A stretch of DNA of 64,000 nucleotides from positions 1 through 64,000 of IMG/VR virus record IMGVR_UViG_3300044591_002232. One strand, written 5' to 3'. The position numbers and the translations under genes were made by a program. The notes beneath the pieces were generated by a model. The model had not been told where the DNA came from. It saw only the letters and a program-made list of their open reading frames with translations, and made no database searches. Position 1 is the first letter of the stretch; each line of letters begins with the position of its first letter. Positions 20,512 to 53,160 of the stretch are shown here, piece after piece.

Positions 20512-20700
20512 ATGAGCATTTCGACTAATGGTCAACTTTGCTATGGGTGTCTTTTTGAAGAAGACTATGAATTTCCATGGAGTAATGATGAGTTTGAATA
20601 TGATATTGAGTTATGGTGGAGACATATTAAGGGGTTTGTAAATCCCATAGAAACTCCTTATGATGGAAAGGATCATAAACAGTTAATCATTCGCTACTAA
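20512..20700 (+). pseudogene. Gene interrupted by IS607
   Basis: Removing 20672-22430 rejoins ...TPYDGK to DHGIDVINVKDIKKIIEELENE* in frame. Confidence 0.6.
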
Positions 20701-20736
20701 ATAGTAACGTTAAACAACAAACTTTACTAAATAAAT

Positions 20737-21330
20737 ATGTATGTAACTTTAAGGGAGGCAAGAAAACAACTAGGACTTCATCCAAATACCCTTAGAAAGT
20801 ATGCCGATGAGGGGATTATTGAAACAATAAAAACTCCATCTGGACAACGAAGATTCAATGTTGAATCTTTTATAAAACAAAAACAAAATAGTTTACAAAC
20901 AATTCTTTACTGCAGAGTTTCAAGTGCTAGACAAAAAGACGACCTCCAAAATCAAAAAAATTATCTCATCTCAAAGTACCCAGGAGCAGAGGTTATTATT
21001 GATGTCGGCTCTGGACTCAATTTTAAACGAAGAGGTTTGCGTTCCATTTTGGAACGATTATTGCAGGGAGATTCAATCCAACTTGTGGTTGCCCAGCGTG
21101 ACCGACTTTGCAGATTCGGATTTGACCTCATTGAATATCTCGTCGTTAAAAACGGTGGAGAAATCGTGGTTCTCGATCAAATCGAGCACAGTCCAGAAGG
21201 AGAACTTGTATCCGACATCCTTTCTATCATCCATGTTTTCTCTTGTAGAATACATGGGATGCGAAAGTATAAAAATCAAATCAAAGAAGATAAGGATTTA
21301 CCCAAACCAAACTCAAAGACAAATCCTTAG
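20737..21330 (+). CDS. tnpA: IS607 transposase (MerR-like HTH + serine recombinase)
   Basis: YVTLREARKQLGLHPNTLRKY HTH; YCRVSS catalytic Ser; DVGSGLNFKR. Confidence 0.95.
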   Translation: MYVTLREARKQLGLHPNTLRKYADEGIIETIKTPSGQRRFNVESFIKQKQNSLQTILYCRVSSARQKDDLQNQKNYLISKYPGAEVIIDVGSGLNFKRRGLRSILERLLQGDSIQLVVAQRDRLCRFGFDLIEYLVVKNGGEIVVLDQIEHSPEGELVSDILSIIHVFSCRIHGMRKYKNQIKEDKDLPKPNSKTNP

Positions 21331-22411
21331 ACAATGGTTTGGTGCATCAAGATACACTTATAATGAAACCGTTAAGTTTTTAAAAGAACCAGATACTAAG
21401 GCATCTTGGAAATCAATAAAAACTGGTTTGATTCATTCTTTACCCGATTGGGCGGAAGAAATTCCTTATCAAATTAAATCTGTTGCCGTAAGAGATTGCT
21501 GTAAGGCAGTTTCTATGTGTAAACGAAAAAATAGAGGAATTCCACCAGAAGATTGGCATGAAGTTAAATTTAGAAGCAGACGTGAACCAAAACAAACAAT
21601 TTACGTTCCTAAGACTTCTATATCTAAAAATGGTGTTTATCACACTATTTTAGGGAAATTAAAAATGAGTGAAATGCTTCCCGACAACATTATGGATTCA
21701 AGATTAACATTAGATAATGGTAGATACTTTTTAATAATTCCTTACGAAGAAAAAACAATTCCATGTGAGAACCAAGCAAGAGTTGTTTCTTTAGATCCAG
21801 GAGTTAGAATATTCCAGACATTTTATAACCCAGAATTTTCCGGGGCTATTGGTGATGGCGACATTGGTAGAATAACCAGATTATGTTATCATCTTGATTC
21901 TCTAATCTCAAAACGAGATAAGTCTAAGTCTAGAAAAAAATATAGACTCAATAAGGCTATCAAACGAATGAGAAATAAAATCAAAGATTTGGTCGATGAA
22001 ATTCATCATAAGACTGCAAGGTTTTTGGTTGATAATTTTGATATTATTCTTCTTCCTTCATTTGATGTAAGTCAAATGGTTAAAAAGGGTAAGAGAAAAA
22101 TCAACTCTAAAACGACCAGATCTATGTTGACATGGGCTCATTATAGATTTAAGTGTTTTCTTAAAGACAAATGTGAAGAATTTAATAAGGTTCTTCTTAT
22201 TGTTAATGAGGCCTATACATCAAAAACAGTGTCTTGGAATGGAAAAATTAATTACTCTTTAGGTGGATCTAAAGTTGTTAAAGACAAAAACCATTGTGTC
22301 CCTAGAGATATTAATGGAGCCCGAAATATTTGGGTAAAAAGCGTCTCAAGAATTCTTGAGGCTTTGGGAGATAGCCCCTCAAGTAGCAATACTTGTGCAT
22401 TGTTAACGTAA
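21002..22411 (+). CDS. tnpB: IS607 TnpB with Fanzor-like rearranged RuvC (start uncertain: GTG 20924 or ATG 21002)
   Basis: SLDPG (RuvC-I), ILLP in place of the canonical Glu, NEAYTSKT (relocated Glu), RDINGARNI (RuvC-III); Zn-finger cysteines absent. Confidence 0.85.
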   Translation: MSALDSILNEEVCVPFWNDYCREIQSNLWLPSVTDFADSDLTSLNISSLKTVEKSWFSIKSSTVQKENLYPTSFLSSMFSLVEYMGCESIKIKSKKIRIYPNQTQRQILRQWFGASRYTYNETVKFLKEPDTKASWKSIKTGLIHSLPDWAEEIPYQIKSVAVRDCCKAVSMCKRKNRGIPPEDWHEVKFRSRREPKQTIYVPKTSISKNGVYHTILGKLKMSEMLPDNIMDSRLTLDNGRYFLIIPYEEKTIPCENQARVVSLDPGVRIFQTFYNPEFSGAIGDGDIGRITRLCYHLDSLISKRDKSKSRKKYRLNKAIKRMRNKIKDLVDEIHHKTARFLVDNFDIILLPSFDVSQMVKKGKRKINSKTTRSMLTWAHYRFKCFLKDKCEEFNKVLLIVNEAYTSKTVSWNGKINYSLGGSKVVKDKNHCVPRDINGARNIWVKSVSRILEALGDSPSSSNTCALLT

Positions 22412-22490
22412 GTTAGCAAAAATCTATCGGATCACGGAATTGATGTTATTAATGTAAAGGATATTAAGAAGATTATTGAGGAACTTGAAA

Positions 22491-26386: not shown

Positions 26387-26500
26387 TTGATTTAAAAACT
26401 CCAAAGGAGTTCTCTTAACCTCACGGTTAAAAATTCCTGCTTCAACGCTTACGCCTTCAGCAAATTCGCTTCGGGTCTTATCTCTGCTCCACAGGCAAAC
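26387..26500 (-). ncRNA. Probable TnpB omegaRNA scaffold / element right end
   Basis: Minus strand reads TTGAAGCAGGAA...CCGTGAGG...AACTCCTTTGGAGTT hairpin, then TCAA, as in IS605 right ends. Confidence 0.55.
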
Positions 26501-27582
26501 CCTGCCAATCCGACAGTTAAAATATTTTTTGCCGCATTAATGTCTCTATCGTGAACTGCTCCACAATCATGACAAGTCCATTCACGGACACTTAACGGCA
26601 TAGAAGATTGAATAGAACCACAAGAACTACAAGTTTTACTTGAAGGGAAAAATCTATCAACTTTCAATAGAGTTCTCCCATACCAGTCGCACTTATATTT
26701 TAATAAAAAAATAAATTGCGACCAAGAAACTTCAGCAATTGCTCTTGCTAATTTGTGGTTTTTCAACATACCAGACACATTTAAGTCCTCAACCACTATC
26801 GTTTGATTCTCACGAACAAGTTGAGTGCTTATTTTGTGATGATAATCTAATCTTGTATCTACAATCTTTTGATGTAGTTTAGCAACTTTAACTCTTGCTT
26901 TCTCACGATTTTTAGAACCTTTCTGCTTTTTATATAATCTTTGATTGAGGATTTTTAATCTTTTTTGGACTTTTCTTAACCACTTTGGATTGGTAATTTT
27001 ATCACCGTTAGAAGTAGCAAAGAAACAATCAATACCTAAATCAAGACCTATCACTTTATCTGTTGGTTCAAGTTGTTTGATTTCTTCTTGACACAACATA
27101 CTAATCATCCATCTTCCGCTTGGTTCAAGTGTGATGGTTATAGTAGAAGGATAAGAAGGGATTTGACGAGACCAACGAATATTCAAGGGTTCTTTTGATT
27201 TTGCTATATAAATCTTACCTTCTTTATACTTAAAGGCAGATTTAGTTAATTCACAAGAGTTTCTGTTTTTTCTCTTCTTAAATCTTGGATATTTACTTTT
27301 CTTTTGGAAAAAGTTTTTAAATCCAGTTTGTAGATGTTGAAGAGATTGTTGTAGAGGAACACAAGAAACTTCATTTAACCATTCATACTCTTCTTTTTTC
27401 TTGAGTTCCGTCAAAAGAGCACTTGTTTGATTGTATCCTACAGAGTTTTTATTTTGATGCCATTCTTTGGTTCTATAATCAAGAAAATGATTATAGACCA
27501 CACGGCAACAACCAAGAGTTTTTCTTAAAAGAACCTCTTGACTTTCTGTAGGATAAAATCTAAACTTGTATGCTCTATACAT
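26449..27582 (-). CDS. tnpB: IS200/IS605-type TnpB RNA-guided nuclease, no adjacent tnpA
   Basis: RAYKFRFYP, GLDLG, VVEDL, CSSCG/CHDCG, DRDINAAKNI; all three RuvC acidic residues present. Confidence 0.95.
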   Translation of the reverse strand: MYRAYKFRFYPTESQEVLLRKTLGCCRVVYNHFLDYRTKEWHQNKNSVGYNQTSALLTELKKKEEYEWLNEVSCVPLQQSLQHLQTGFKNFFQKKSKYPRFKKRKNRNSCELTKSAFKYKEGKIYIAKSKEPLNIRWSRQIPSYPSTITITLEPSGRWMISMLCQEEIKQLEPTDKVIGLDLGIDCFFATSNGDKITNPKWLRKVQKRLKILNQRLYKKQKGSKNREKARVKVAKLHQKIVDTRLDYHHKISTQLVRENQTIVVEDLNVSGMLKNHKLARAIAEVSWSQFIFLLKYKCDWYGRTLLKVDRFFPSSKTCSSCGSIQSSMPLSVREWTCHDCGAVHDRDINAAKNILTVGLAGFACGAEIRPEANLLKA

Positions 27583-27609
27583 TTATGAGTTGTATGTTTA
27601 ACTCATAAG

Positions 27610-27617
27610 TATTTATA
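27610..27617 (-). promoter_or_regulatory. Late promoter TATAAATA for tnpB (26449..27582), followed by a hairpin abutting the ATG
   Basis: Minus strand: TATAAATA-c-TTATGAGTT-aaacatac-AACTCATAA-ATG. Confidence 0.7.
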
Positions 27618-27727
27618 AAAGTTTAACCTTTTCTTAACCTAATTTAGGACACTTTACGAACTGGAACAGGAGCACTTGAAATCCGGTGCCTTTTGTAGTA
27701 TAATGACCTTACAAACAAAGAACCAAA

Positions 27728-28111: not shown

Positions 28112-28364
28112 TCAACAACATCCTGATATTATTGAAATCGGTGGTGTAAAATACAAACGAATTGTAGAAAACCCAAAACCAGAGACACTTTTTGATATTA
28201 TTTACGAATGGAAGTATAATACCTGTGACCCAACCTGCGAAAAACTTGTAGATATGATTGAAAGTGAATGGTTGCCTCTTGAAGGTTCCCACGACGGAAA
28301 AAGTTATATTTATAGTGCTGGTTGGAATGATTGTATCAAATATCTAAAGAAGAACCTCAAATGA
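28104..28364 (+). CDS. Hypothetical protein, paralogous in part to 37315..37551
   Basis: Shared WLP....GWNxCI motif. Confidence 0.65.
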   Translation: MTNQQHPDIIEIGGVKYKRIVENPKPETLFDIIYEWKYNTCDPTCEKLVDMIESEWLPLEGSHDGKSYIYSAGWNDCIKYLKKNLK

Positions 28365-29676
28365 CTAAAATACTCAAATACATAAAATCCAGAAAAACAA
28401 TCTACGTTCCTTCACTTTGGCTCGGTATTTTGTTAGTTGCTTTTTTCTTTCCACAGTATGGTTTGTGGTTTATGTTTGGAACTGCTTGGGGAGTATTGTG
28501 GATGGTCGCGTACAATTGGTATCACGACAAATGATTGATTATGCTTTGATTGAGTACGAACTCATCTTGGAAGAAGTCGCAAAACTTCCAAGAGCAAGCG
28601 CCACAGACACTTGCGGAACCATCCCTAGTGTGCTAGACTTGCTGTACCAACGACTTTTGGATTATGACTGTTGAAGAATTGATTGAAAAACTAAAAGAGT
28701 TTCCTCTTGACTCAAAAGTGAAGGTTTATGATGATTATTGGGGAGAACGTATAGACCCTCTTATTGATATGTGGGAAAAAGAAGTTGTTTTTTATTCTGA
28801 CCGACGATGACTAATATAATTATTCCTAAAATAGCATACCTTCCTCTTGAATTTACACTTCCTGTGGATGAGTTCTTGAAAATGTGGGACGAAACCTTAG
28901 GAGAACCTACACAAAAAGATTATGATAATTATTGTCGTTCTTGTGCCGTAGAAGTTTTTTACGGTACTTTGAGTGAAGATATTGAAGAAAGTATTCGTTT
29001 ACGACAGGACAATTGAGATGAACTTCAGTGATTTACCCGACAACTCTTGGGAAAAAGTAATGTATAAGGTTGTAGAGTTTATTGGTGGGGATGCCCCATA
29101 CTTATGTAATTGGAGTGATGAAATTCCAACACCGCAAAAAGTAGCAGAAGAGATTGTTTCTATGGTAGCATATCTTGATGATACCGACCCAGATAAGTTT
29201 ATTGAATCCTTTAGAAAGTTTTGTAAAAAATGACTGAACAAAATAGAATCTATTTTTCATACCGAGATGTAAACAGAGAACTACAACACGCATCTATAAC
29301 TCATGAGGATGCTGGTCCATTACTTGGAGATATGATGACGCAATTGTATGAATATATTGCCTGGATAAAAAATTCACCTGGAGGTAAAAATGACTGAACG
29401 CTCAAAATATTATCCAGTTTCTATTGAGAAACTACAAAAGGCAAGCATAGCAGATTTGGCATATCTCATTGCGCCCATGAATATTGGCATAGATTATGAG
29501 TATTTTAAACAAATCAAACATGTTCTTGATATACCAAAACCCTCAAAATCTTTAGAAGAATTCAAACAAGAACTAGATAGTAAATTTGTTGACTTTTTGG
29601 TAAAAACCAAGAGGAAATTTGCTGTATCTAAAGAGAGTGCCGAATAGTAATAAAAACCAATAAAAATCTAAAAACT

Positions 29677-30876
29677 CTATTGATTTTCTAGACGCTTCAA
29701 CGCAGACGCTAAATGATGTTGGACACCATTTAGACTTACTTCCGCTCCACGTCCGTAATCGACATACTCTGCCGATGTTAATTCTTGACCCGAAAGGTCT
29801 AACCACCCTTTTTTAAGGATGTTGATAGAGGCATTTAAGTCTCTATCGCGATGAGAGCCACAAGAAGGACAAGTCCATTCACGAACACTTAAAGGCATCT
29901 TGTCTTCTTTATGTCCACAGTTAGAACAGGTCTTGGAACTAGGGTAAAACCTATCTATTTTGGTCAAAGTTTTTCCGTACCAGTTACACTTGTACTCCAA
30001 CATAGAAACAAAAGTAGACCAAGAGGCATCACTAATGGATTTTGCAAGTTTGTGGTTCTTTAACATTCCAGAAACATTTAAGTCTTCAACAACAATCAAA
30101 TCAAATGTCTTAACAAGTTCTGTTGAAATATTATGCAAGAAATAATTTCTTGAGTTAGTAATGTTTTCGTGTACTTTAGCAACTTTAATACGTTGTCTAT
30201 TGTAACGATTACTACCTTTCTTTTTACGACTTAAATGTTTCTGTGCTTTTTTAAGTTTAGATTGGTTCTTTCTAAACCATCTTGGGTTATTGATGACTTG
30301 ACCATTTGATAAAGTCATTAGTTCTTTTAAACCCAAATCAATACCTACTACTTTACCAGTAGAGGGTATTGGATTGAGTTCTTGTTGGACTAAAATTGAA
30401 ACAAAATACTTTCCGGTTGGAGTTTTAGAAACAGTAATGCTTCTAAAATCGGCTTCTTCAGGGATATTTCGGTCCAGAACAATTTTGACCCAACCAATTT
30501 TTTCGATCCTTATTGAACATTTTTCTTGATCAAGTTTAAATCTAGTTTTTTCTGGAAGCCTAAATGATTGTCTATTGGTCTTTTTCTTGAATTTCGGCTT
30601 TCCAAGTTTAACCTTCCTTTTTTTGTTAAAGTATTGTTTCTTAAACTCAACAAAATCCATTCTTTTTTGTTGAAGTGTTGATGCCGATACTTCTTTAAGG
30701 AACTCAAACTCCTCTTGGTCTTTTAGTGTTTTTTCATTTACTATGGTACCATCATTATTGTTAAAATTTTCAACTAACTTATTCCAAACAAAACGAACAC
30801 AACCAAAAGTTTTAGCAAATAAAACCTCTTGTTCTTTTGTAGGATAAATCCTATATTTGTATGCTTTTAAATGCAT
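29677..30876 (-). CDS. tnpB: IS200/IS605-type TnpB, no adjacent tnpA
   Basis: KAYKYRIYP, GIDLG, VVEDL, CSNCG/CPSCG, DRDLNASINI; RuvC triad intact. Confidence 0.95.
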   Translation of the reverse strand: MHLKAYKYRIYPTKEQEVLFAKTFGCVRFVWNKLVENFNNNDGTIVNEKTLKDQEEFEFLKEVSASTLQQKRMDFVEFKKQYFNKKRKVKLGKPKFKKKTNRQSFRLPEKTRFKLDQEKCSIRIEKIGWVKIVLDRNIPEEADFRSITVSKTPTGKYFVSILVQQELNPIPSTGKVVGIDLGLKELMTLSNGQVINNPRWFRKNQSKLKKAQKHLSRKKKGSNRYNRQRIKVAKVHENITNSRNYFLHNISTELVKTFDLIVVEDLNVSGMLKNHKLAKSISDASWSTFVSMLEYKCNWYGKTLTKIDRFYPSSKTCSNCGHKEDKMPLSVREWTCPSCGSHRDRDLNASINILKKGWLDLSGQELTSAEYVDYGRGAEVSLNGVQHHLASALKRLENQ

Positions 30877-30882
30877 GTCACT

Positions 30883-30983
30883 TTAATTGGGTCGTTATAT
30901 CTATTTAGTAAATTTTATTTTTAGGGAGAGATTTATTCTCTCCCGCTTGAAAAGAACGACCCAATCAAGCACTTTTATTTAGT
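30883..30983 (-). promoter_or_regulatory. Twin late-promoter boxes and nested hairpins upstream of tnpB
   Basis: ACTAAATA at 30976-30983 and 30902-30909; 14-nt inverted repeat 30883-30896/30955-30968 enclosing a GGGAGAGA/TCTCTCCC hairpin. Confidence 0.7.
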
Positions 30984-31174
30984 AAAGTTTTTATTGGAAA
31001 TTTATTGATTTTATGCATTTTTGTATTTATACCCATATTTTTCTCAAGATGTAAAAAAATTGCCCAGGCATCCGGGGTTTTAGAGACCCTCAAGGACACC
31101 TGATCAACTGGCACAATTACCCATAAACACCCCCACTAATCCCCTAAACTACAATTGCCTTAAACAAAACACCC

Positions 31175-31732
31175 ATGAAAACTTTTGACACCTTTGAGAA
31201 ACTAGATGGAATGCTTCTTTGTAAGAAGAAGCCTATTATTGTCCATTGTATTCAGATTAATGAGCCATTTCGAGTAAATAGCCTGGAAGGCGATTATAAG
31301 CAGGGAAAAGTCGGTGATTATCTAATGCGCGGAATTGACGGTGAACTGTATATTTGCGACAAGGATATTTTTGAGCGGTCTTATGACATTATCGAGGAAG
31401 AACGCTCCCAAGAAGGACTAACTCTTGGTGAACTCATTGATACTTTGAGGTCAATGCCACCAGATACAAAAGTTTCCAATCTTACTTACCCTCACTCTTA
31501 TAGGGGTTATTATACAGACTTGGCCTTTGAAAAAAAGTCTGGTACTCGTCTGGCTTGTGAACTCCTTTTTGAATGTGAATCTGCACTAGAAAGTACATTT
31601 TACGGTTATAGAGGGGGAGAGTATGGAATGAATATGGAAACATCTGTCTGGATTGCAGATTATGGTTCCACCGGGGAAAGGCTTATTGGGCTAGGACCCG
31701 ATGGAACAATTGAAACCAAGTTTCTAAACTAA
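31175..31732 (+). CDS. Two-domain hypothetical protein (N-terminal GDYLxRG phage domain)
   Basis: SLEG...GDYLMRGIDGELYICDKDIFE; paralogue of 54660..54932. Confidence 0.7.
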   Translation: MKTFDTFEKLDGMLLCKKKPIIVHCIQINEPFRVNSLEGDYKQGKVGDYLMRGIDGELYICDKDIFERSYDIIEEERSQEGLTLGELIDTLRSMPPDTKVSNLTYPHSYRGYYTDLAFEKKSGTRLACELLFECESALESTFYGYRGGEYGMNMETSVWIADYGSTGERLIGLGPDGTIETKFLN

Positions 31733-32231
31733 AAACACTACATTAACAAAGGAGATTTTTTTATGTATCAAATCGTTATCGCAACTCCTCTGGGAGAACT
31801 TGGAACCAAACCCTTCTCTGAGGAAGAAAAGTCTAAGGTTGAAACTGAAATTCTTGAAAATCTTTCAATTCTAACTTATGTAAGTTTTGTACTTGAAGAC
31901 GGCCAAGACCTCTATATGACAAAGGATATGATTGGTCGGAGTGTCTTTTTCCTCAAAAAATTGTCGTGATTTTTGAATACTCAAATTCTTGGAATTCTCC
32001 GAGATTTTGGCTTTCACCAAATATTGGAGATGTTGTTGGGCAATTGTCTCTTTCTCATGGACTTGCCCTTGTAGAATATTCTCAAGAACTTTCTTGGACT
32101 CGTTCTATTGGTTCTTTTCTTGTCAGCGGAGACTTTAATGATGTTAGAGTCTTTGGGGAACGACTTGAAAAAGACTATTCAAAGTATTTAACTCTTACTC
32201 ACACTGACTGGATTTATTACCAAAACCTATT

Positions 32232-32966
32232 ATGATTATCGAAACTCTTCTTTCTCTGGCAATTTCTCACGCTGTTCCCCAACTTCCATCTCCTGTAATT
32301 TTTCAGGCCCTGACTCCTCCTGCTTATGCAAAGAGTTTTGGTGCGAGTAGTTCATCTTCTTTCCGTTCATCTTCTTCTTTTAGTTCTGGCTCGTCTTTTC
32401 GGTCTACTTCTTCTTTCCGGCCCAGTTCTAGTCCGTCATTTAGTTCCCCTAGGATTTCTACACCGGCTCCTGCGCCTAGGATTTCATCACCAGCACCCGT
32501 GAGGATTTCTACACCACCTCCTGCACCCAAGATTTCCGCTCCTCCTAAAGTATCTTCTTCGGCTCCTGCGAATAATATTGTTCGTATCAATAAGCAAACG
32601 ACTTCTGCACCAAAGACAGTCTCTGCACCTCCAGTAAAGAACACTATTTCTGCACCAAAAACTACTCCTACTTCCCCGGCTCCTGTGGTGACGCGAGAGA
32701 CTTATGTGGAGCGTTATAATGATTCTGGAATTATGGGGAATCCTTGGTTCTGGATGTACATGTTTGATAACAACCGACAATCTGCCCCTGTCCAACAACA
32801 GGTTCCGACTCAGGTGATTGTTAAAGATTCCGAAGGAGAATCTGTAAAAATTCCTGAAAATCAGATGATTGTTCGTAAATATAGTCACAATCCTCTCCGA
32901 GAGTTTGCAGTATTCTCTCTTGGTGGTGGACTTGGTGTTCTTCTTGGTCGTCGTCTTAGTCTTTGA
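32232..32966 (+). CDS. Secreted or membrane Ser/Pro-rich low-complexity protein
   Basis: Hydrophobic N-terminus ending AYA, SSF/PAP-rich linker, C-terminal TM segment. Confidence 0.7.
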   Translation: MIIETLLSLAISHAVPQLPSPVIFQALTPPAYAKSFGASSSSSFRSSSSFSSGSSFRSTSSFRPSSSPSFSSPRISTPAPAPRISSPAPVRISTPPPAPKISAPPKVSSSAPANNIVRINKQTTSAPKTVSAPPVKNTISAPKTTPTSPAPVVTRETYVERYNDSGIMGNPWFWMYMFDNNRQSAPVQQQVPTQVIVKDSEGESVKIPENQMIVRKYSHNPLREFAVFSLGGGLGVLLGRRLSL

Positions 32967-53081: not shown

Positions 53082-53160
53082 ACTCCACTGGCGAAACGGT
53101 AAACGCGGCAGACTCAAAATCTGCTTCTTCGGATTCCCAGTTCAAATCTGGGGTGGAGTA
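53082..53160 (+). tRNA. trnL: tRNA-Leu (anticodon CAA)
   Basis: Acceptor ACTCCAC/GTGGAGT, D-stem GCG/CGC, anticodon arm GCAGA-CTCAAAA-TCTGC, TC-TTCG-GA variable arm, T-arm CCCAG-TTCAAAT-CTGGG; CCA not encoded. Confidence 0.92.

What the first reader, a model, noticed from the sequence alone, without database searches (positions are those of the whole stretch)
29650..30990. Solo TnpB no. 2 with a two-promoter, nested-hairpin translational switch and atypical ends
Seen on the minus strand: ACTAAATA - TTGATTGGGTCGTT - [GGGAGAGA/TCTCTCCC hairpin] - ACTAAATA - AACGACCCAATTAA - AGTGAC-ATG. Transcripts from upstream can pair the 14-nt arms and mask the initiation region; those from the inner box cannot. 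I see no TCAA-terminated IS605 right end beyond the stop, only an AATCAATA/TATTGGTT stem, and a 10-bp CCAATAAAAA inverted pair flanks the unit (~29657 and ~30987). With the other two elements, all three TnpBs in the window carry late boxes. Inference: a phage-adapted class of RNA-guided homing elements, or anti-competitor nucleases, independent of TnpA.
Basis: partly seen in the sequence, partly recalled or inferred. Interest (0 to 1): 0.7.

Follow-up and report, generated by a model that had tools for sequence, protein, structure and literature searches.

The report
Phage TnpB with late-promoter leader switch
A T4-like lake cyanophage carries an RNA-guided nuclease gene (TnpB) with no transposase, preceded by the same late-expression RNA leader as the phage's classical homing-endonuclease genes, which suggests it is expressed, and probably spreads, like a homing endonuclease.

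Summary
On the minus strand, 29644-31028 is a 1.39-kb unit. It holds an intact ISDra2-type tnpB (29677-30876), an omegaRNA-like scaffold that ends sharply at ...TTACTAT (29644), and a 115-nt leader: late box, arm 1, GC hairpin, late box, arm 2, ATG.

The genome is a 250-kb T4-like cyanomyovirus from lake water. CTAAATA behaves as its late-promoter box.

The leader is conserved in at least 15 distinct copies from related phages. The arms co-vary: cognate duplex -22.8 versus non-cognate -13.7 kcal/mol. Long transcripts fold shut; transcripts from the inner box are open. This matches the known T4 scheme for I-TevI, segB, mobE and gene e, here in a two-box, long-range form.

The same homologous leader precedes homing-endonuclease genes in this phage (GIY-YIG) and in a relative (NUMOD3).

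No Y1 TnpA occurs in six phage records. The right end is exact at more than 20 sites; the left side is ragged. A relative carries four full copies plus late-promoter-driven stand-alone omegaRNA minis.

Function is untested. No RNA run was listed.

The parts
29677..30876 (-). tnpB, 399 aa, ISDra2-type RNA-guided nuclease. RuvC residues D180, E264 and D346 are intact.
   Evidence: Pfam OrfB_IS605 (4e-29), Cas12f1-like_TNB (4e-27) and HTH_OrfB_IS605 (4e-18). Match to ISDra2 TnpB 8bf8 at E = 7e-70, with identical residues at D191/E278/D361. dN/dS of 0.07-0.17 against 13 homologues.
29644..29777 (-). omegaRNA-like scaffold. It overlaps the 3' end of tnpB and ends at the right end, ...TTACTAT (29644-29650).
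   Evidence: Conserved, partly covarying structure in 10 homologues. Homology stops exactly after TTACTAT in all copies. The only copy in the genome by nhmmer, E = 9e-41.
29653..29687 (-). It spans the stop codon at 29677-29679.
   Evidence: Deleted in the copies L010, L012 and L015, which still end in TTACTAT or TTACTAC.
29624..29643 (-). Presumed guide-encoding flank (TCGGCACTCTCTTTAGATAC), the DNA just outside the right end.
   Evidence: Position follows the TnpB/omegaRNA rule (PMC8612924). The uninterrupted allele in a related phage (L006, around 1248) carries the same sequence with one mismatch in the first 16 nt. Guide function is inferred.
30976..30983 (-). Outer late-promoter-like box, ACTAAATA. 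Predicted start about 30970, the first base of the long helix.
   Evidence: Conserved in all copies. The start is placed by the rule that the box occupies -12 to -6 (PMC1524935); it was not mapped.
30945..30970 (-). P1 local hairpin (GCTTGA...TCAAGC) holding most of arm 1 (30955-30968) in its loop.
   Evidence: 97% of cells paired, 2 pairs with compensatory change, covariation score above 500 of 500 shuffles. 16 G-U cells, which fit the sense strand only.
30924..30944 (-). P2 GC-rich hairpin between the two boxes.
   Evidence: Identical to hairpins, each followed by a T-run at a gene end, at 82253 and 82852 of the genome. No T-run here. The sister cassette at 174024 has a T-run and is flagged terminator-like.
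30902..30909 (-). Inner late-promoter-like box, ACTAAATA. Predicted start about 30896, the first base of arm 2.
   Evidence: In homologues it is CTAAATA, TATAAATA or ATAAATA at the same place, 3-6 nt before arm 2.
30877..30896 (-). Arm 2 (30883-30896) plus the 6 nt before the ATG. In long transcripts it pairs with the 5' end.
   Evidence: Probability that positions -12 to +3 are unpaired: 0.40 in the long transcript, 0.77 in the short one.
30984..31028 (-). Left-end-proximal 45 nt. Shared with the L006 copy, which sits at a different site.
   Evidence: Homology of WIN with L006 reaches about 31031. Other copies carry different DNA here.
31029..31032 (-). GTAT, probable transposon-adjacent motif (TAM) at the left junction. 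Together with the left end it forms TATAAATA at 31024-31031.
   Evidence: NGTAY precedes the target or left end at 7 of 9 junctions examined. The naive allele of the flanking gene remnant has TGTAC at this place (L030 4526-4614).
29390..29647 (+). Flanking phage gene truncated by the element. Its stop codon TAG (29645-29647) is supplied by the right end.
   Evidence: The L006 homologue reads on past this point.
31035..31110 (+). Broken 3' remnant of a gene on the left side of the element. I call it ligase-like from its C-terminal peptide; that reading is mine.
   Evidence: 75% identity to the 3' end of an intact gene in L030 (4526-4614), with a stop and a frameshift here.

Best explanation
The unit at 29644-31028 (minus strand) is a transposase-less IS200/IS605-type TnpB/omegaRNA element that has been fitted into the gene-expression programme of a T4-like cyanophage. 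It most likely behaves as a free-standing, RNA-guided homing endonuclease gene.

Shown:
- The nuclease gene is intact and under purifying selection.
- Its 3' end plus 33 nt form a conserved structured RNA that ends at an exact right end.
- The DNA beyond that end differs from copy to copy.
- The leader is a conserved, co-varying RNA structure with two late-promoter-like boxes. Each box sits 5 nt before one strand of a long-range helix of about 20 bp.
- A homologous leader precedes homing-endonuclease genes of the same phage group.

Inferred:
- The phage late sigma factor starts transcription 6 nt after each box.
- RNA from the inner box begins at arm 2, is unstructured and is translated late in infection.
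- Longer RNAs, from the outer box or from read-through, pair their 5' end with arm 2 and the bases up to 3-4 nt before the AUG, and are poorly translated. They can still deliver the omegaRNA.
- TnpB with its omegaRNA then cuts NGTAY-flanked copies of the flank sequence in co-infecting relatives that lack the insertion.
- Recombinational repair copies the element in, or the rival genome is lost.
- No TnpA is needed for this step.
For: Identity:
- Pfam domains; ISDra2 TnpB match at E = 7e-70 with D/E/D conserved; dN/dS 0.07-0.17.
- The phage is T4-like. Gene order is terminase, sheath, portal, scaffold, major head. The major head protein is 88% identical to Synechococcus phages B3 and B23. Source is lake water.

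Late box:
- 33 of 61 CTAAATA lie within 60 nt upstream of an ATG on the same strand, clustered in the structural-gene region.
- CTAAATA at -12 to -6 is the late promoter of the T4-like phage Aeh1 (PMC1524935).

Leader:
- z = -5.9; the short form is unstructured.
- In 12 homologues the long form folds at -30 to -43 kcal/mol with the same long-range helix. The initiation region is 0.35-0.56 unpaired in long forms, against 0.62-0.84 in ten of the twelve short forms.
- Cognate arms -22.8 versus non-cognate -13.7 kcal/mol. Three further distinct copies give -20.7 to -28.8.
- G-U pairs favour the sense strand.

Precedent: a late promoter placed inside an RBS-sequestering structure controls I-TevI, I-TevII, I-TevIII, segB, mobE, e and soc in T-even phages (PMC2988022, PMC3014915).

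Same leader on homing endonucleases:
- Genome 176851-176962 precedes a GIY-YIG gene.
- Relative G001 at 100876 precedes a NUMOD3 gene.
- Leader homology ends at the ATG.

Mobility without TnpA:
- No Y1_Tnp in six records, while the controls were positive.
- Four full and six partial copies in one 243-kb genome.
- A clean empty site in this genome for the L007 copy.
- The window at 32757 is the empty site of the L006 copy.
- More than 100 protein clusters at 72-99% identity, several on 90-250 kb contigs. No close relative among the representative genomes of 185,579 species.
- TnpA-independent spread driven by TnpB has been shown in plasmids (PMC11870625; PMC13565253).
Against: - No transcript data: no RNA run was listed. 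Both start sites are predictions.
- The helix stops 3-4 nt before the AUG and the putative Shine-Dalgarno is weak. The computed opening effect is moderate, and absent in two of the twelve short forms (L006, L024).
- If long transcripts are silent, the strict conservation of the outer box is not explained by gating alone.
- P1 co-varies as a local hairpin that competes with the long helix.
- In the window, the two flanks of the element belong to different broken genes. The present guide is therefore probably not the original one.
- The one naive allele found (L006) has TATGT, not NGTAY, before the match.
- No empty allele of this very site was seen in four lake metagenomes.
- Exact right ends at more than 20 sites point to a site-specific step that homing alone does not supply.
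Confidence: 0.6

Rival explanations
1. It is an ordinary non-autonomous IS200/IS605 element, moved in trans by a Y1 TnpA of the cyanobacterial host. TnpB only restores excised copies. The leader is just a phage-style promoter region.
For: The right end is exact at more than 20 independent sites, with a terminal hairpin and a conserved end motif. A recurrent NGTAY sits beside the left end or target. Most tnpB genes in bacteria lack a nearby tnpA and are thought to be moved in trans (PMC10055086). Mini copies resemble PATEs.
Against: No Y1 TnpA in six phage records. No conserved sub-terminal hairpin lies next to the left junction. The 47-140 nt between the TAM and the outer box differ between copies. 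No close relative of this TnpB was found among cellular genome representatives. Host genomes were not examined for a matching TnpA.
Confidence: 0.2
2. The outer box, P1 and P2 form a small RNA gene of about 55-60 nt. The RNA presents arm 1 and pairs in trans with arm 2 of the mRNA made from the inner box. It damps endonuclease translation. This would act instead of, or alongside, closure in cis.
For: The outer box is conserved in every copy, with its predicted start at the foot of P1. The P1 stem co-varies with arm 1 in its loop. P2 is followed by a T-run in the sister cassettes at 174024 (flagged terminator-like) and 189203, and in L111. In the minis, the outer box and P1 survive without any ORF, so the box is used on its own.
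Against: In B2 and most TnpB copies P2 has no T-run and fails the terminator scan. The 5' strand of P1 also matches the bases 3' of arm 2, which implies that P1 opens. The loops of the minis have no target in their genome. No RNA data.
Confidence: 0.25
3. The hairpins act on DNA, as single-strand structures for transposition or recombination at the left end, not on RNA.
For: IS200/IS605 ends work as DNA hairpins (established knowledge). The minis keep box plus P1 together with the right end.
Against: P1 has 16 G-U cells, which would be A-C mismatches on the other strand. The long-range arms are slightly better on the sense strand. The same leader sits before GIY-YIG genes, which are not IS605 elements. 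The spacing of both boxes to the helix strands fits transcription starts.
Confidence: 0.07
4. It is a decaying relic with no present function.
For: In the window both flanks are broken genes and the guide may be orphaned.
Against: The ORF and catalytic triad are intact, with dN/dS near 0.1. Leader pairing is maintained by compensatory change. The sequence is 99% identical in several lake samples.
Confidence: 0.03

Closest known systems
T-even phage control of homing endonucleases and late genes (I-TevI, I-TevII, I-TevIII, segB, mobE of Aeh1; genes e, soc, 49) by an RBS-sequestering RNA structure with a late promoter inside it (PMC2988022, PMC3014915)
   Same: A late-promoter box is placed so that late transcripts lack the 5' strand of a structure covering the initiation region. 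It is used for nuclease genes embedded in a T4-like genome.
   Different: Here the pairing is long-range, about 58 nt apart, not a simple hairpin. It encloses a second hairpin (P2). A second conserved late box sits at the foot of the 5' strand. A competing local hairpin (P1) also co-varies. The gene controlled is an RNA-guided TnpB. The helix ends a few nt before the AUG.
ISDra2 TnpB/omegaRNA of Deinococcus radiodurans, IS200/IS605 family (PMC8612924; PDB 8bf8, 8exa, 8h1j)
   Same: Same protein architecture and catalytic triad. The guide RNA scaffold overlaps the 3' end of tnpB and stops at the right end. The guide is the flanking DNA. A short motif adjoins the target.
   Different: No TnpA in the element or the genome. 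The host is a lytic T4-like phage. The left end is replaced by a phage late-expression leader. The probable TAM is NGTAY, not TTGAT. About 45% identity only.
TnpB-driven, TnpA-independent spread of IS605 in multicopy plasmids, and 'non-restorative homing' (PMC11870625, PMC13565253)
   Same: Proposed mode of spread: the guide records the insertion site and the nuclease cuts element-free copies in a population of co-resident genomes.
   Different: That was shown for plasmids with laboratory elements. Here the setting is natural co-infecting phages, and the evidence is only comparative.
Free-standing GIY-YIG/HNH homing endonuclease genes (seg, mob) of T4-like phages
   Same: Presence/absence between conserved phage genes, late expression, and mosaic flanks. 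The same leader cassette is shared with such genes in this phage group.
   Different: Target recognition is by RNA guide rather than by protein. The right end is exact, and multiple copies occur per genome.
IS200 tnpA 5' UTR of Salmonella: mRNA structure hiding the Shine-Dalgarno, plus a cis-encoded sRNA (PMC4513863)
   Same: A transposon-borne leader structure limits translation of the element's protein.
   Different: No phage late promoters, no promoter inside the structure; the regulator there is a true antisense RNA.
PATE-like, protein-less IS605 derivatives that encode omegaRNAs (PMC10055086)
   Same: The minis in relative G001 are protein-less units that keep the omegaRNA scaffold and the right end.
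   Different: The minis carry their own phage late-promoter box, mostly with P1, fused directly to the scaffold. None occurs in the window's genome.

Membership tests
TnpB (OrfB_IS605, ISDra2-like RNA-guided nuclease) | HTH, OrfB_IS605 (RuvC) and zinc-ribbon TNB domains | tested here: met
   All three Pfam families are above their curated cut-offs.
TnpB (OrfB_IS605, ISDra2-like RNA-guided nuclease) | RuvC catalytic D-E-D triad | tested here: met
   D180, E264 and D346 align with D191, E278 and D361 of 8bf8. It is therefore not a nuclease-dead TldR.
TnpB (OrfB_IS605, ISDra2-like RNA-guided nuclease) | omegaRNA scaffold overlapping the 3' end of the gene and ending at the element's right end | tested here: met
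   Conserved structure with 6 compensatory pairs. Sharp loss of homology after TTACTAT. Rfam has no match.
TnpB (OrfB_IS605, ISDra2-like RNA-guided nuclease) | RNA-guided, TAM-dependent DNA cleavage | not testable with these tools
   NGTAY is inferred from 7 of 9 junctions. No biochemistry.
IS200/IS605 transposon | Y1 (HUH) TnpA in the element or the genome | tested here: not met
   PF01797 is absent from G000 and G001-G005, while the control genomes were positive. The host was not examined.
IS200/IS605 transposon | Sub-terminal hairpins at both ends | tested here: inconclusive
   The right end has a hairpin 9 nt from the end. No conserved hairpin lies next to the left junction. P1 lies 59 nt or more inside and also occurs on GIY-YIG leaders.
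IS200/IS605 transposon | Insertion 3' of a short conserved motif, without target duplication | tested here: inconclusive
   WIN, L006 and L207 have the left end directly after GGTAT or AGTAT. L007's occupied allele has TGCGT where this genome's empty site has TGTAT. L203 and one mini instead show a 57-80 nt diverged duplication of the target gene's end.
IS607 family | Serine-recombinase TnpA next to tnpB | tested here: not met
   None lies beside B2. The IS607-type TnpA at 20737-21330 belongs to a TnpB only 24% identical. The shared 17-mer is the extended late-promoter consensus, which is also seen at other late genes.
T4-type late-promoter / RBS-sequestering structure | The box motif acts as the late-promoter signal of this genome | tested here: met
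   33 of 61 CTAAATA are upstream of genes on the same strand, concentrated at 123-205 kb with the structural genes. Activity itself was not measured.
T4-type late-promoter / RBS-sequestering structure | The promoter lies between the two strands, so late RNA lacks the 5' strand | tested here: met
   The inner box lies 3-6 nt before arm 2 in all copies.
T4-type late-promoter / RBS-sequestering structure | [quoted passage not shown] | tested here: inconclusive
   The helix covers about -4 to -26. The AUG itself is free or in a weak 3-4 bp hairpin. The unpaired probability rises from about 0.45 to about 0.75 in ten of twelve copies.
T4-type late-promoter / RBS-sequestering structure | Mapped late 5' ends and late-only translation | not testable with these tools
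   No RNA run was listed for this sequence.
Free-standing homing endonuclease gene | Presence/absence polymorphism between conserved genes of related phages, with the nuclease's target equal to the empty allele | tested here: met
   The L007 copy against the empty site at 185398-185404 of this genome. The L006 copy against window 32757. Guides match the empty alleles with 1-3 mismatches. Cleavage was not tested.

The most novel reading that the evidence does not exclude
T4-like freshwater cyanophages host a complete transposase-free, RNA-guided homing system built from four parts:
- TnpB under a portable two-late-promoter RNA leader that it shares with GIY-YIG homing endonucleases.
- The outer promoter supplying untranslated precursor or a regulatory RNA.
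- Stand-alone, late-promoter-driven omegaRNA genes that add further guides.
- In some copies, a recoded duplicate of the interrupted gene's 3' end. This keeps the phage gene intact and immune, because it has the TAM but mismatches in the seed. The orphan copy next to the right end serves as the guide.

On this reading the system drives itself through phage populations during co-infection.
Probability: 0.35. Interest if true: 0.85.

Novelty: new variant of a known kind. Interest (0 to 1): 0.72.

Why it matters
How TnpB-only elements persist and spread without a transposase is an open question. Whether RNA-guided nucleases act in phage-against-phage competition is also open.

This locus gives a natural, sequence-defined case. 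Here a TnpB has taken over the regulatory leader of classical homing endonucleases in a lytic phage. The co-varying arms offer ready-made mutation and compensation tests. Related phages supply empty alleles, multi-copy genomes and stand-alone guide genes.

It also extends the T4 paradigm of a late promoter inside an inhibitory RNA structure. The new form has two promoters and two alternative folds, and may involve a small regulatory RNA, something not yet described for T4-type phages (PMC3014915).

In practice, the family offers compact nucleases with a probable NGTAY motif and a scaffold of about 125 nt.

Tried and rejected
- RNA evidence: no RNA run was listed for the element.
- Empty allele of this site: four lake metagenomes laid on 28300-32800 showed none. 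They showed a variant leader (joint 30876 to 30974) and a replaced left neighbour.
- Rfam: only a tRNA in the window. No family matches the leader or the omegaRNA.
- GenBank phages: no nucleotide match. The best protein hit is 47%.
- IS607 TnpA as mobiliser: rejected. Its TnpB is only 24% identical. The shared 17-mer AAACTTTACTAAATAAA recurs at unrelated late genes.
- The 10-bp inverted pair as terminal repeats: rejected. Both halves lie inside the unit, and the left half is absent from L008, L110, L112, L203 and the minis.
- P2 of B2 as an intrinsic terminator: it fails the T-run criterion, although the sister cassette at 174024 passes.
- Accelerated evolution of the leader: rejected. WIN and L005 are identical over 29650-30750 and diverge over the leader plus the first 125 nt of the ORF. 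This is a recombination patch.
- Stand-alone omegaRNA copies in this genome: none.
- Targets for the P1 loops of the minis: none in their genome.
- Empty sites in this genome for the G001 insertions: the flanks are too diverged.
- Close cellular relatives: none found by the peptide-pattern scan. That scan finds close relatives only.
- Relatives of the GIY-YIG gene for covariation: only identical copies.
- Leaders of the TnpB at 72.9 kb and of the IS607 unit: no significant structure.
- Gene-end duplicates: found in only 2 of about 22 copies.
Full report
**1. What is there**

The window is the first 64 kb of a 249,820-bp virus record with terminal repeats and 37% G+C. The genome carries the T4 order of terminase, tail sheath, portal, scaffold and major head protein. 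Its major head protein is 88% identical to those of Synechococcus phages B3 and B23. The sequence recurs in many lake-water metagenomes. It is therefore a T4-like freshwater cyanomyovirus.

The ORF 29677-30876 (minus) is a 399-aa TnpB with the HTH, OrfB_IS605 and TNB domains. It matches ISDra2 TnpB (8bf8) at E = 7e-70, and the RuvC residues align as D180, E264 and D346. Against 13 homologues dN/dS is 0.07-0.17.

The genome has four TnpB-like genes. The one at 20924-22411 is preceded by a Resolvase/MerR serine recombinase (20737-21330). It is an IS607-type unit, not a solo TnpB.

**2. The observation**

CTAAATA is the genome's late-promoter-like signal. Of 61 copies, 33 lie within 60 nt upstream of an ATG on the same strand, mostly in the structural-gene region. 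CTAAATA at -12 to -6 is the described late promoter of the T4-like phage Aeh1 (PMC1524935). That CTAAATA is also the cyanophage late box is my own recollection and was not retrieved here.

Read as RNA from the outer box, the leader folds at -35.2 kcal/mol (z = -5.9). Read from the inner box, it is unstructured.

**3. Conservation and covariation**

Scans of viral and metagenome contigs gave homologous elements at 76-99% protein identity. A protein search found more than 100 clusters at 72-99% identity, several on 90-250 kb contigs.

All of these copies have the same leader order, but the arms and the inner hairpin differ in sequence. In 12 distinct leaders the cognate arm-1/arm-2 duplex averages -22.8 kcal/mol, against -13.7 for non-cognate combinations.

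Every long form folds into the same long-range helix. Its first pair is at the predicted start of the outer box, and it runs to 3-4 nt before the AUG. The initiation region is 0.35-0.56 unpaired in long forms. In ten of the twelve short forms it is 0.62-0.84; in L006 and L024 it stays at 0.41-0.49.

A local hairpin, P1, holds most of arm 1 in its loop and also co-varies: 97% of cells paired, score above 500 of 500 shuffles. Its many G-U pairs fit only the sense strand. Two mutually exclusive folds are therefore both maintained.

WIN and its 99% relative L005 are identical across most of tnpB. They differ in the leader plus the first 125 nt of the ORF, which is a recombination patch. Contigs from other lakes show the same replacement.

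**4. The leader is not specific to TnpB**

I scanned all TAAATA pairs spaced 50-130 nt for complementarity after each box. This found four cassettes in the genome and nothing in between: four at -20 kcal/mol or better, nineteen at -11.8 or weaker.
- One is B2.
- One, at 176851, precedes a 257-aa GIY-YIG gene lying between a C39-like peptidase gene and a lysozyme gene.
- One, at 174024, precedes a 31-codon ORF. By eye this looks like a GIY-YIG N-terminal remnant; that was not tested.
- One, at 189203, precedes a short ORF.

In the 243-kb relative G001 the cassettes are four TnpB copies plus one before a NUMOD3 endonuclease-like gene. Aligned, the TnpB and endonuclease leaders are homologous up to the ATG and unrelated after it.

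A second TnpB in the window uses the simple T4 design. For B1 (26449-27582), TATAAATA at 27610-27617 overlaps the 5' strand of a hairpin that pairs the AUG.

**5. Ends**

The right end is exact. Every full, truncated or mini copy ends in ...TTACTAT (rarely TTACTAC), and the sequences diverge from the next base. The last 130-230 nt form a conserved, partly co-varying structure, as expected of an omegaRNA scaffold.

The left side is ragged. Homology between copies at different sites starts anywhere from the outer box to about 50 nt upstream.

Three empty/occupied comparisons were possible:
- This genome at 185398-185404 is the clean empty site of the L007 copy.
- Window 32757 is the empty site of the L006 copy.
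- L006 carries the uninterrupted allele of the gene that B2 truncates.

With the left junctions of WIN, L006 and L207 and two duplicated sites, NGTAY (mostly TGTAT) precedes the target or left end in 7 of 9 cases.

In the window the left end abuts GTAT (31029-31032), inside a broken remnant of a gene. I call the remnant ligase-like from its C-terminal peptide. Its naive allele has TGTAC at that place. The right flank belongs to another truncated gene (29390-29647), whose stop codon comes from the element. DNA beside the element has been lost, so the present guide may not be the original one.

The 10-bp inverted pair lies inside the unit and is not general.

**6. Mobility**

No Y1 TnpA is present in this phage or in five related records, one of them complete. 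G001 has four full copies, one 5'-truncated copy and five minis, all with the exact right end.

Four of the minis have a late box fused directly to the 125-nt scaffold, three of them through a P1 hairpin. These are stand-alone, late-promoter-driven guide RNA genes. None occurs in the window's genome.

In L203 and in one mini, the 3' end of the neighbouring phage gene is present twice:
- An intact copy that keeps the TAM but differs in the TAM-proximal bases.
- An orphan copy directly after the right end, which is the guide.

No close relative of this TnpB was found among the representative genomes of 185,579 species. That scan finds close relatives only.

**7. How it most likely works**

Shown: an intact, selected nuclease gene with a guide scaffold and a copy-specific flank; a leader under selection for RNA pairing; late-type boxes at fixed distance from each helix strand; the same leader on homing-endonuclease genes; presence/absence alleles; no TnpA in the phages.

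Inferred: late transcription starts at both boxes. The short RNA is open and translated. Longer RNAs, whether read-through or from the outer box, are closed. This is the scheme established for I-TevI, segB, mobE, e and soc in T-even phages (PMC2988022, PMC3014915). The nuclease then cuts element-free alleles of co-infecting relatives and is copied in by recombination. TnpB has been shown to drive such spread in plasmids without TnpA (PMC11870625, PMC13565253).

The role of the conserved outer box is not explained by gating alone. Three candidates:
- It supplies untranslated precursor for the omegaRNA. TnpB processes its own mRNA (PMC10278001).
- It makes a short P1-P2 RNA that acts on arm 2.
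- It offers microhomology with resident late promoters.

The precise right end at new sites still needs a mechanism. A host TnpA remains possible.

**8. Verdict**

- In kind, it is a new variant of two known things: the T4 late-promoter/RNA-structure control, and TnpB/omegaRNA elements.
- The new parts are their combination in a lytic phage, the two-box and two-fold form of the leader, and its sharing with protein-guided homing endonucleases.
- I found no paper describing TnpB in T4-like phages or this leader.

Noticed in passing
window 20690-22480 (+): An IS607-type unit. A serine-recombinase TnpA (20737-21330; Resolvase + MerR) is followed by a distant TnpB (to 22411; 24% identical to B2). 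Two ACTAAATA boxes lie at 20696 and 20726, the second only 3 nt before the tnpA ATG. It is not a solo TnpB.
   Followed up: partly
window 26449-27650 (-): A second solo TnpB (377 aa, 48% identical to B2). It has a T4-type TATAAATA (27610-27617) overlapping the 5' strand of a hairpin (27580-27612) that pairs the AUG. This is the simple T4 design (z = -2.25).
   Followed up: partly
genome 176851-177736 (L172 3351-4236); also 174024 and 189203: The same two-box cassette precedes a 257-aa GIY-YIG gene lying between a C39-like peptidase gene and a lysozyme gene. Two further cassettes precede only short ORFs. One of these looks by eye like a GIY-YIG N-terminal remnant, and both have a T-run after the P2 hairpin.
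   Followed up: partly
L182 1492-1650 (-); L183 932-1090 and 1526-1660 (-); L181 1511-1650 (-); relative G001: Protein-less minis. A late box (three with a P1 hairpin, one without) is fused directly to the 125-nt omegaRNA scaffold that ends in TTACTAT or TTACTAC. These are stand-alone, late-promoter-driven guide RNA genes. G001 also has four full copies and one 5'-truncated copy.
   Followed up: partly
L203 533-591 versus 1931-1990; L183 (reverse strand) 1972-2047 versus 2275-2350: The 3' end of the phage gene next to the element is present twice. The intact gene copy keeps the AGTAT/TGTAT motif but differs in the bases next to it. The orphan copy directly follows the right end and would be the guide.
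   Followed up: partly
window 30750-30975 versus L005: A mosaic patch. WIN and L005 are 100% identical over 29650-30750 but only 66-82% over the leader and the first 125 nt of tnpB. Contigs from other lakes carry the L005-type leader.
   Followed up: yes
window 31035-31110 (+) and 29390-29647 (+): Both neighbours of the element are damaged genes. One is a frameshifted 3' remnant (ligase-like by my reading of its C-terminal peptide). The other is an 85-codon gene whose stop codon is supplied by the element's right end.
   Followed up: partly
genome 82253-82272 and 82852-82869: Hairpins identical to P2 of the B2 leader. Here each is followed by a T-run at a gene end, so they look like ordinary terminators of this phage.
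   Followed up: no
window 31063-31076 (-): A terminator-like hairpin with a T-run just upstream of the element's left end, on the tnpB strand. It could block read-through into the element.
   Followed up: no
L207 (ENA scaffold, 116 kb): A copy of the element lies directly upstream of a terminase gene whose product also hits a LAGLIDADG family. Several kinds of mobile nuclease cluster there. L209 has a SegE-type GIY-YIG gene just downstream of its copy.
   Followed up: no
window 53082-53160 (+): A tRNA gene, the only Rfam match in the window.
   Followed up: no
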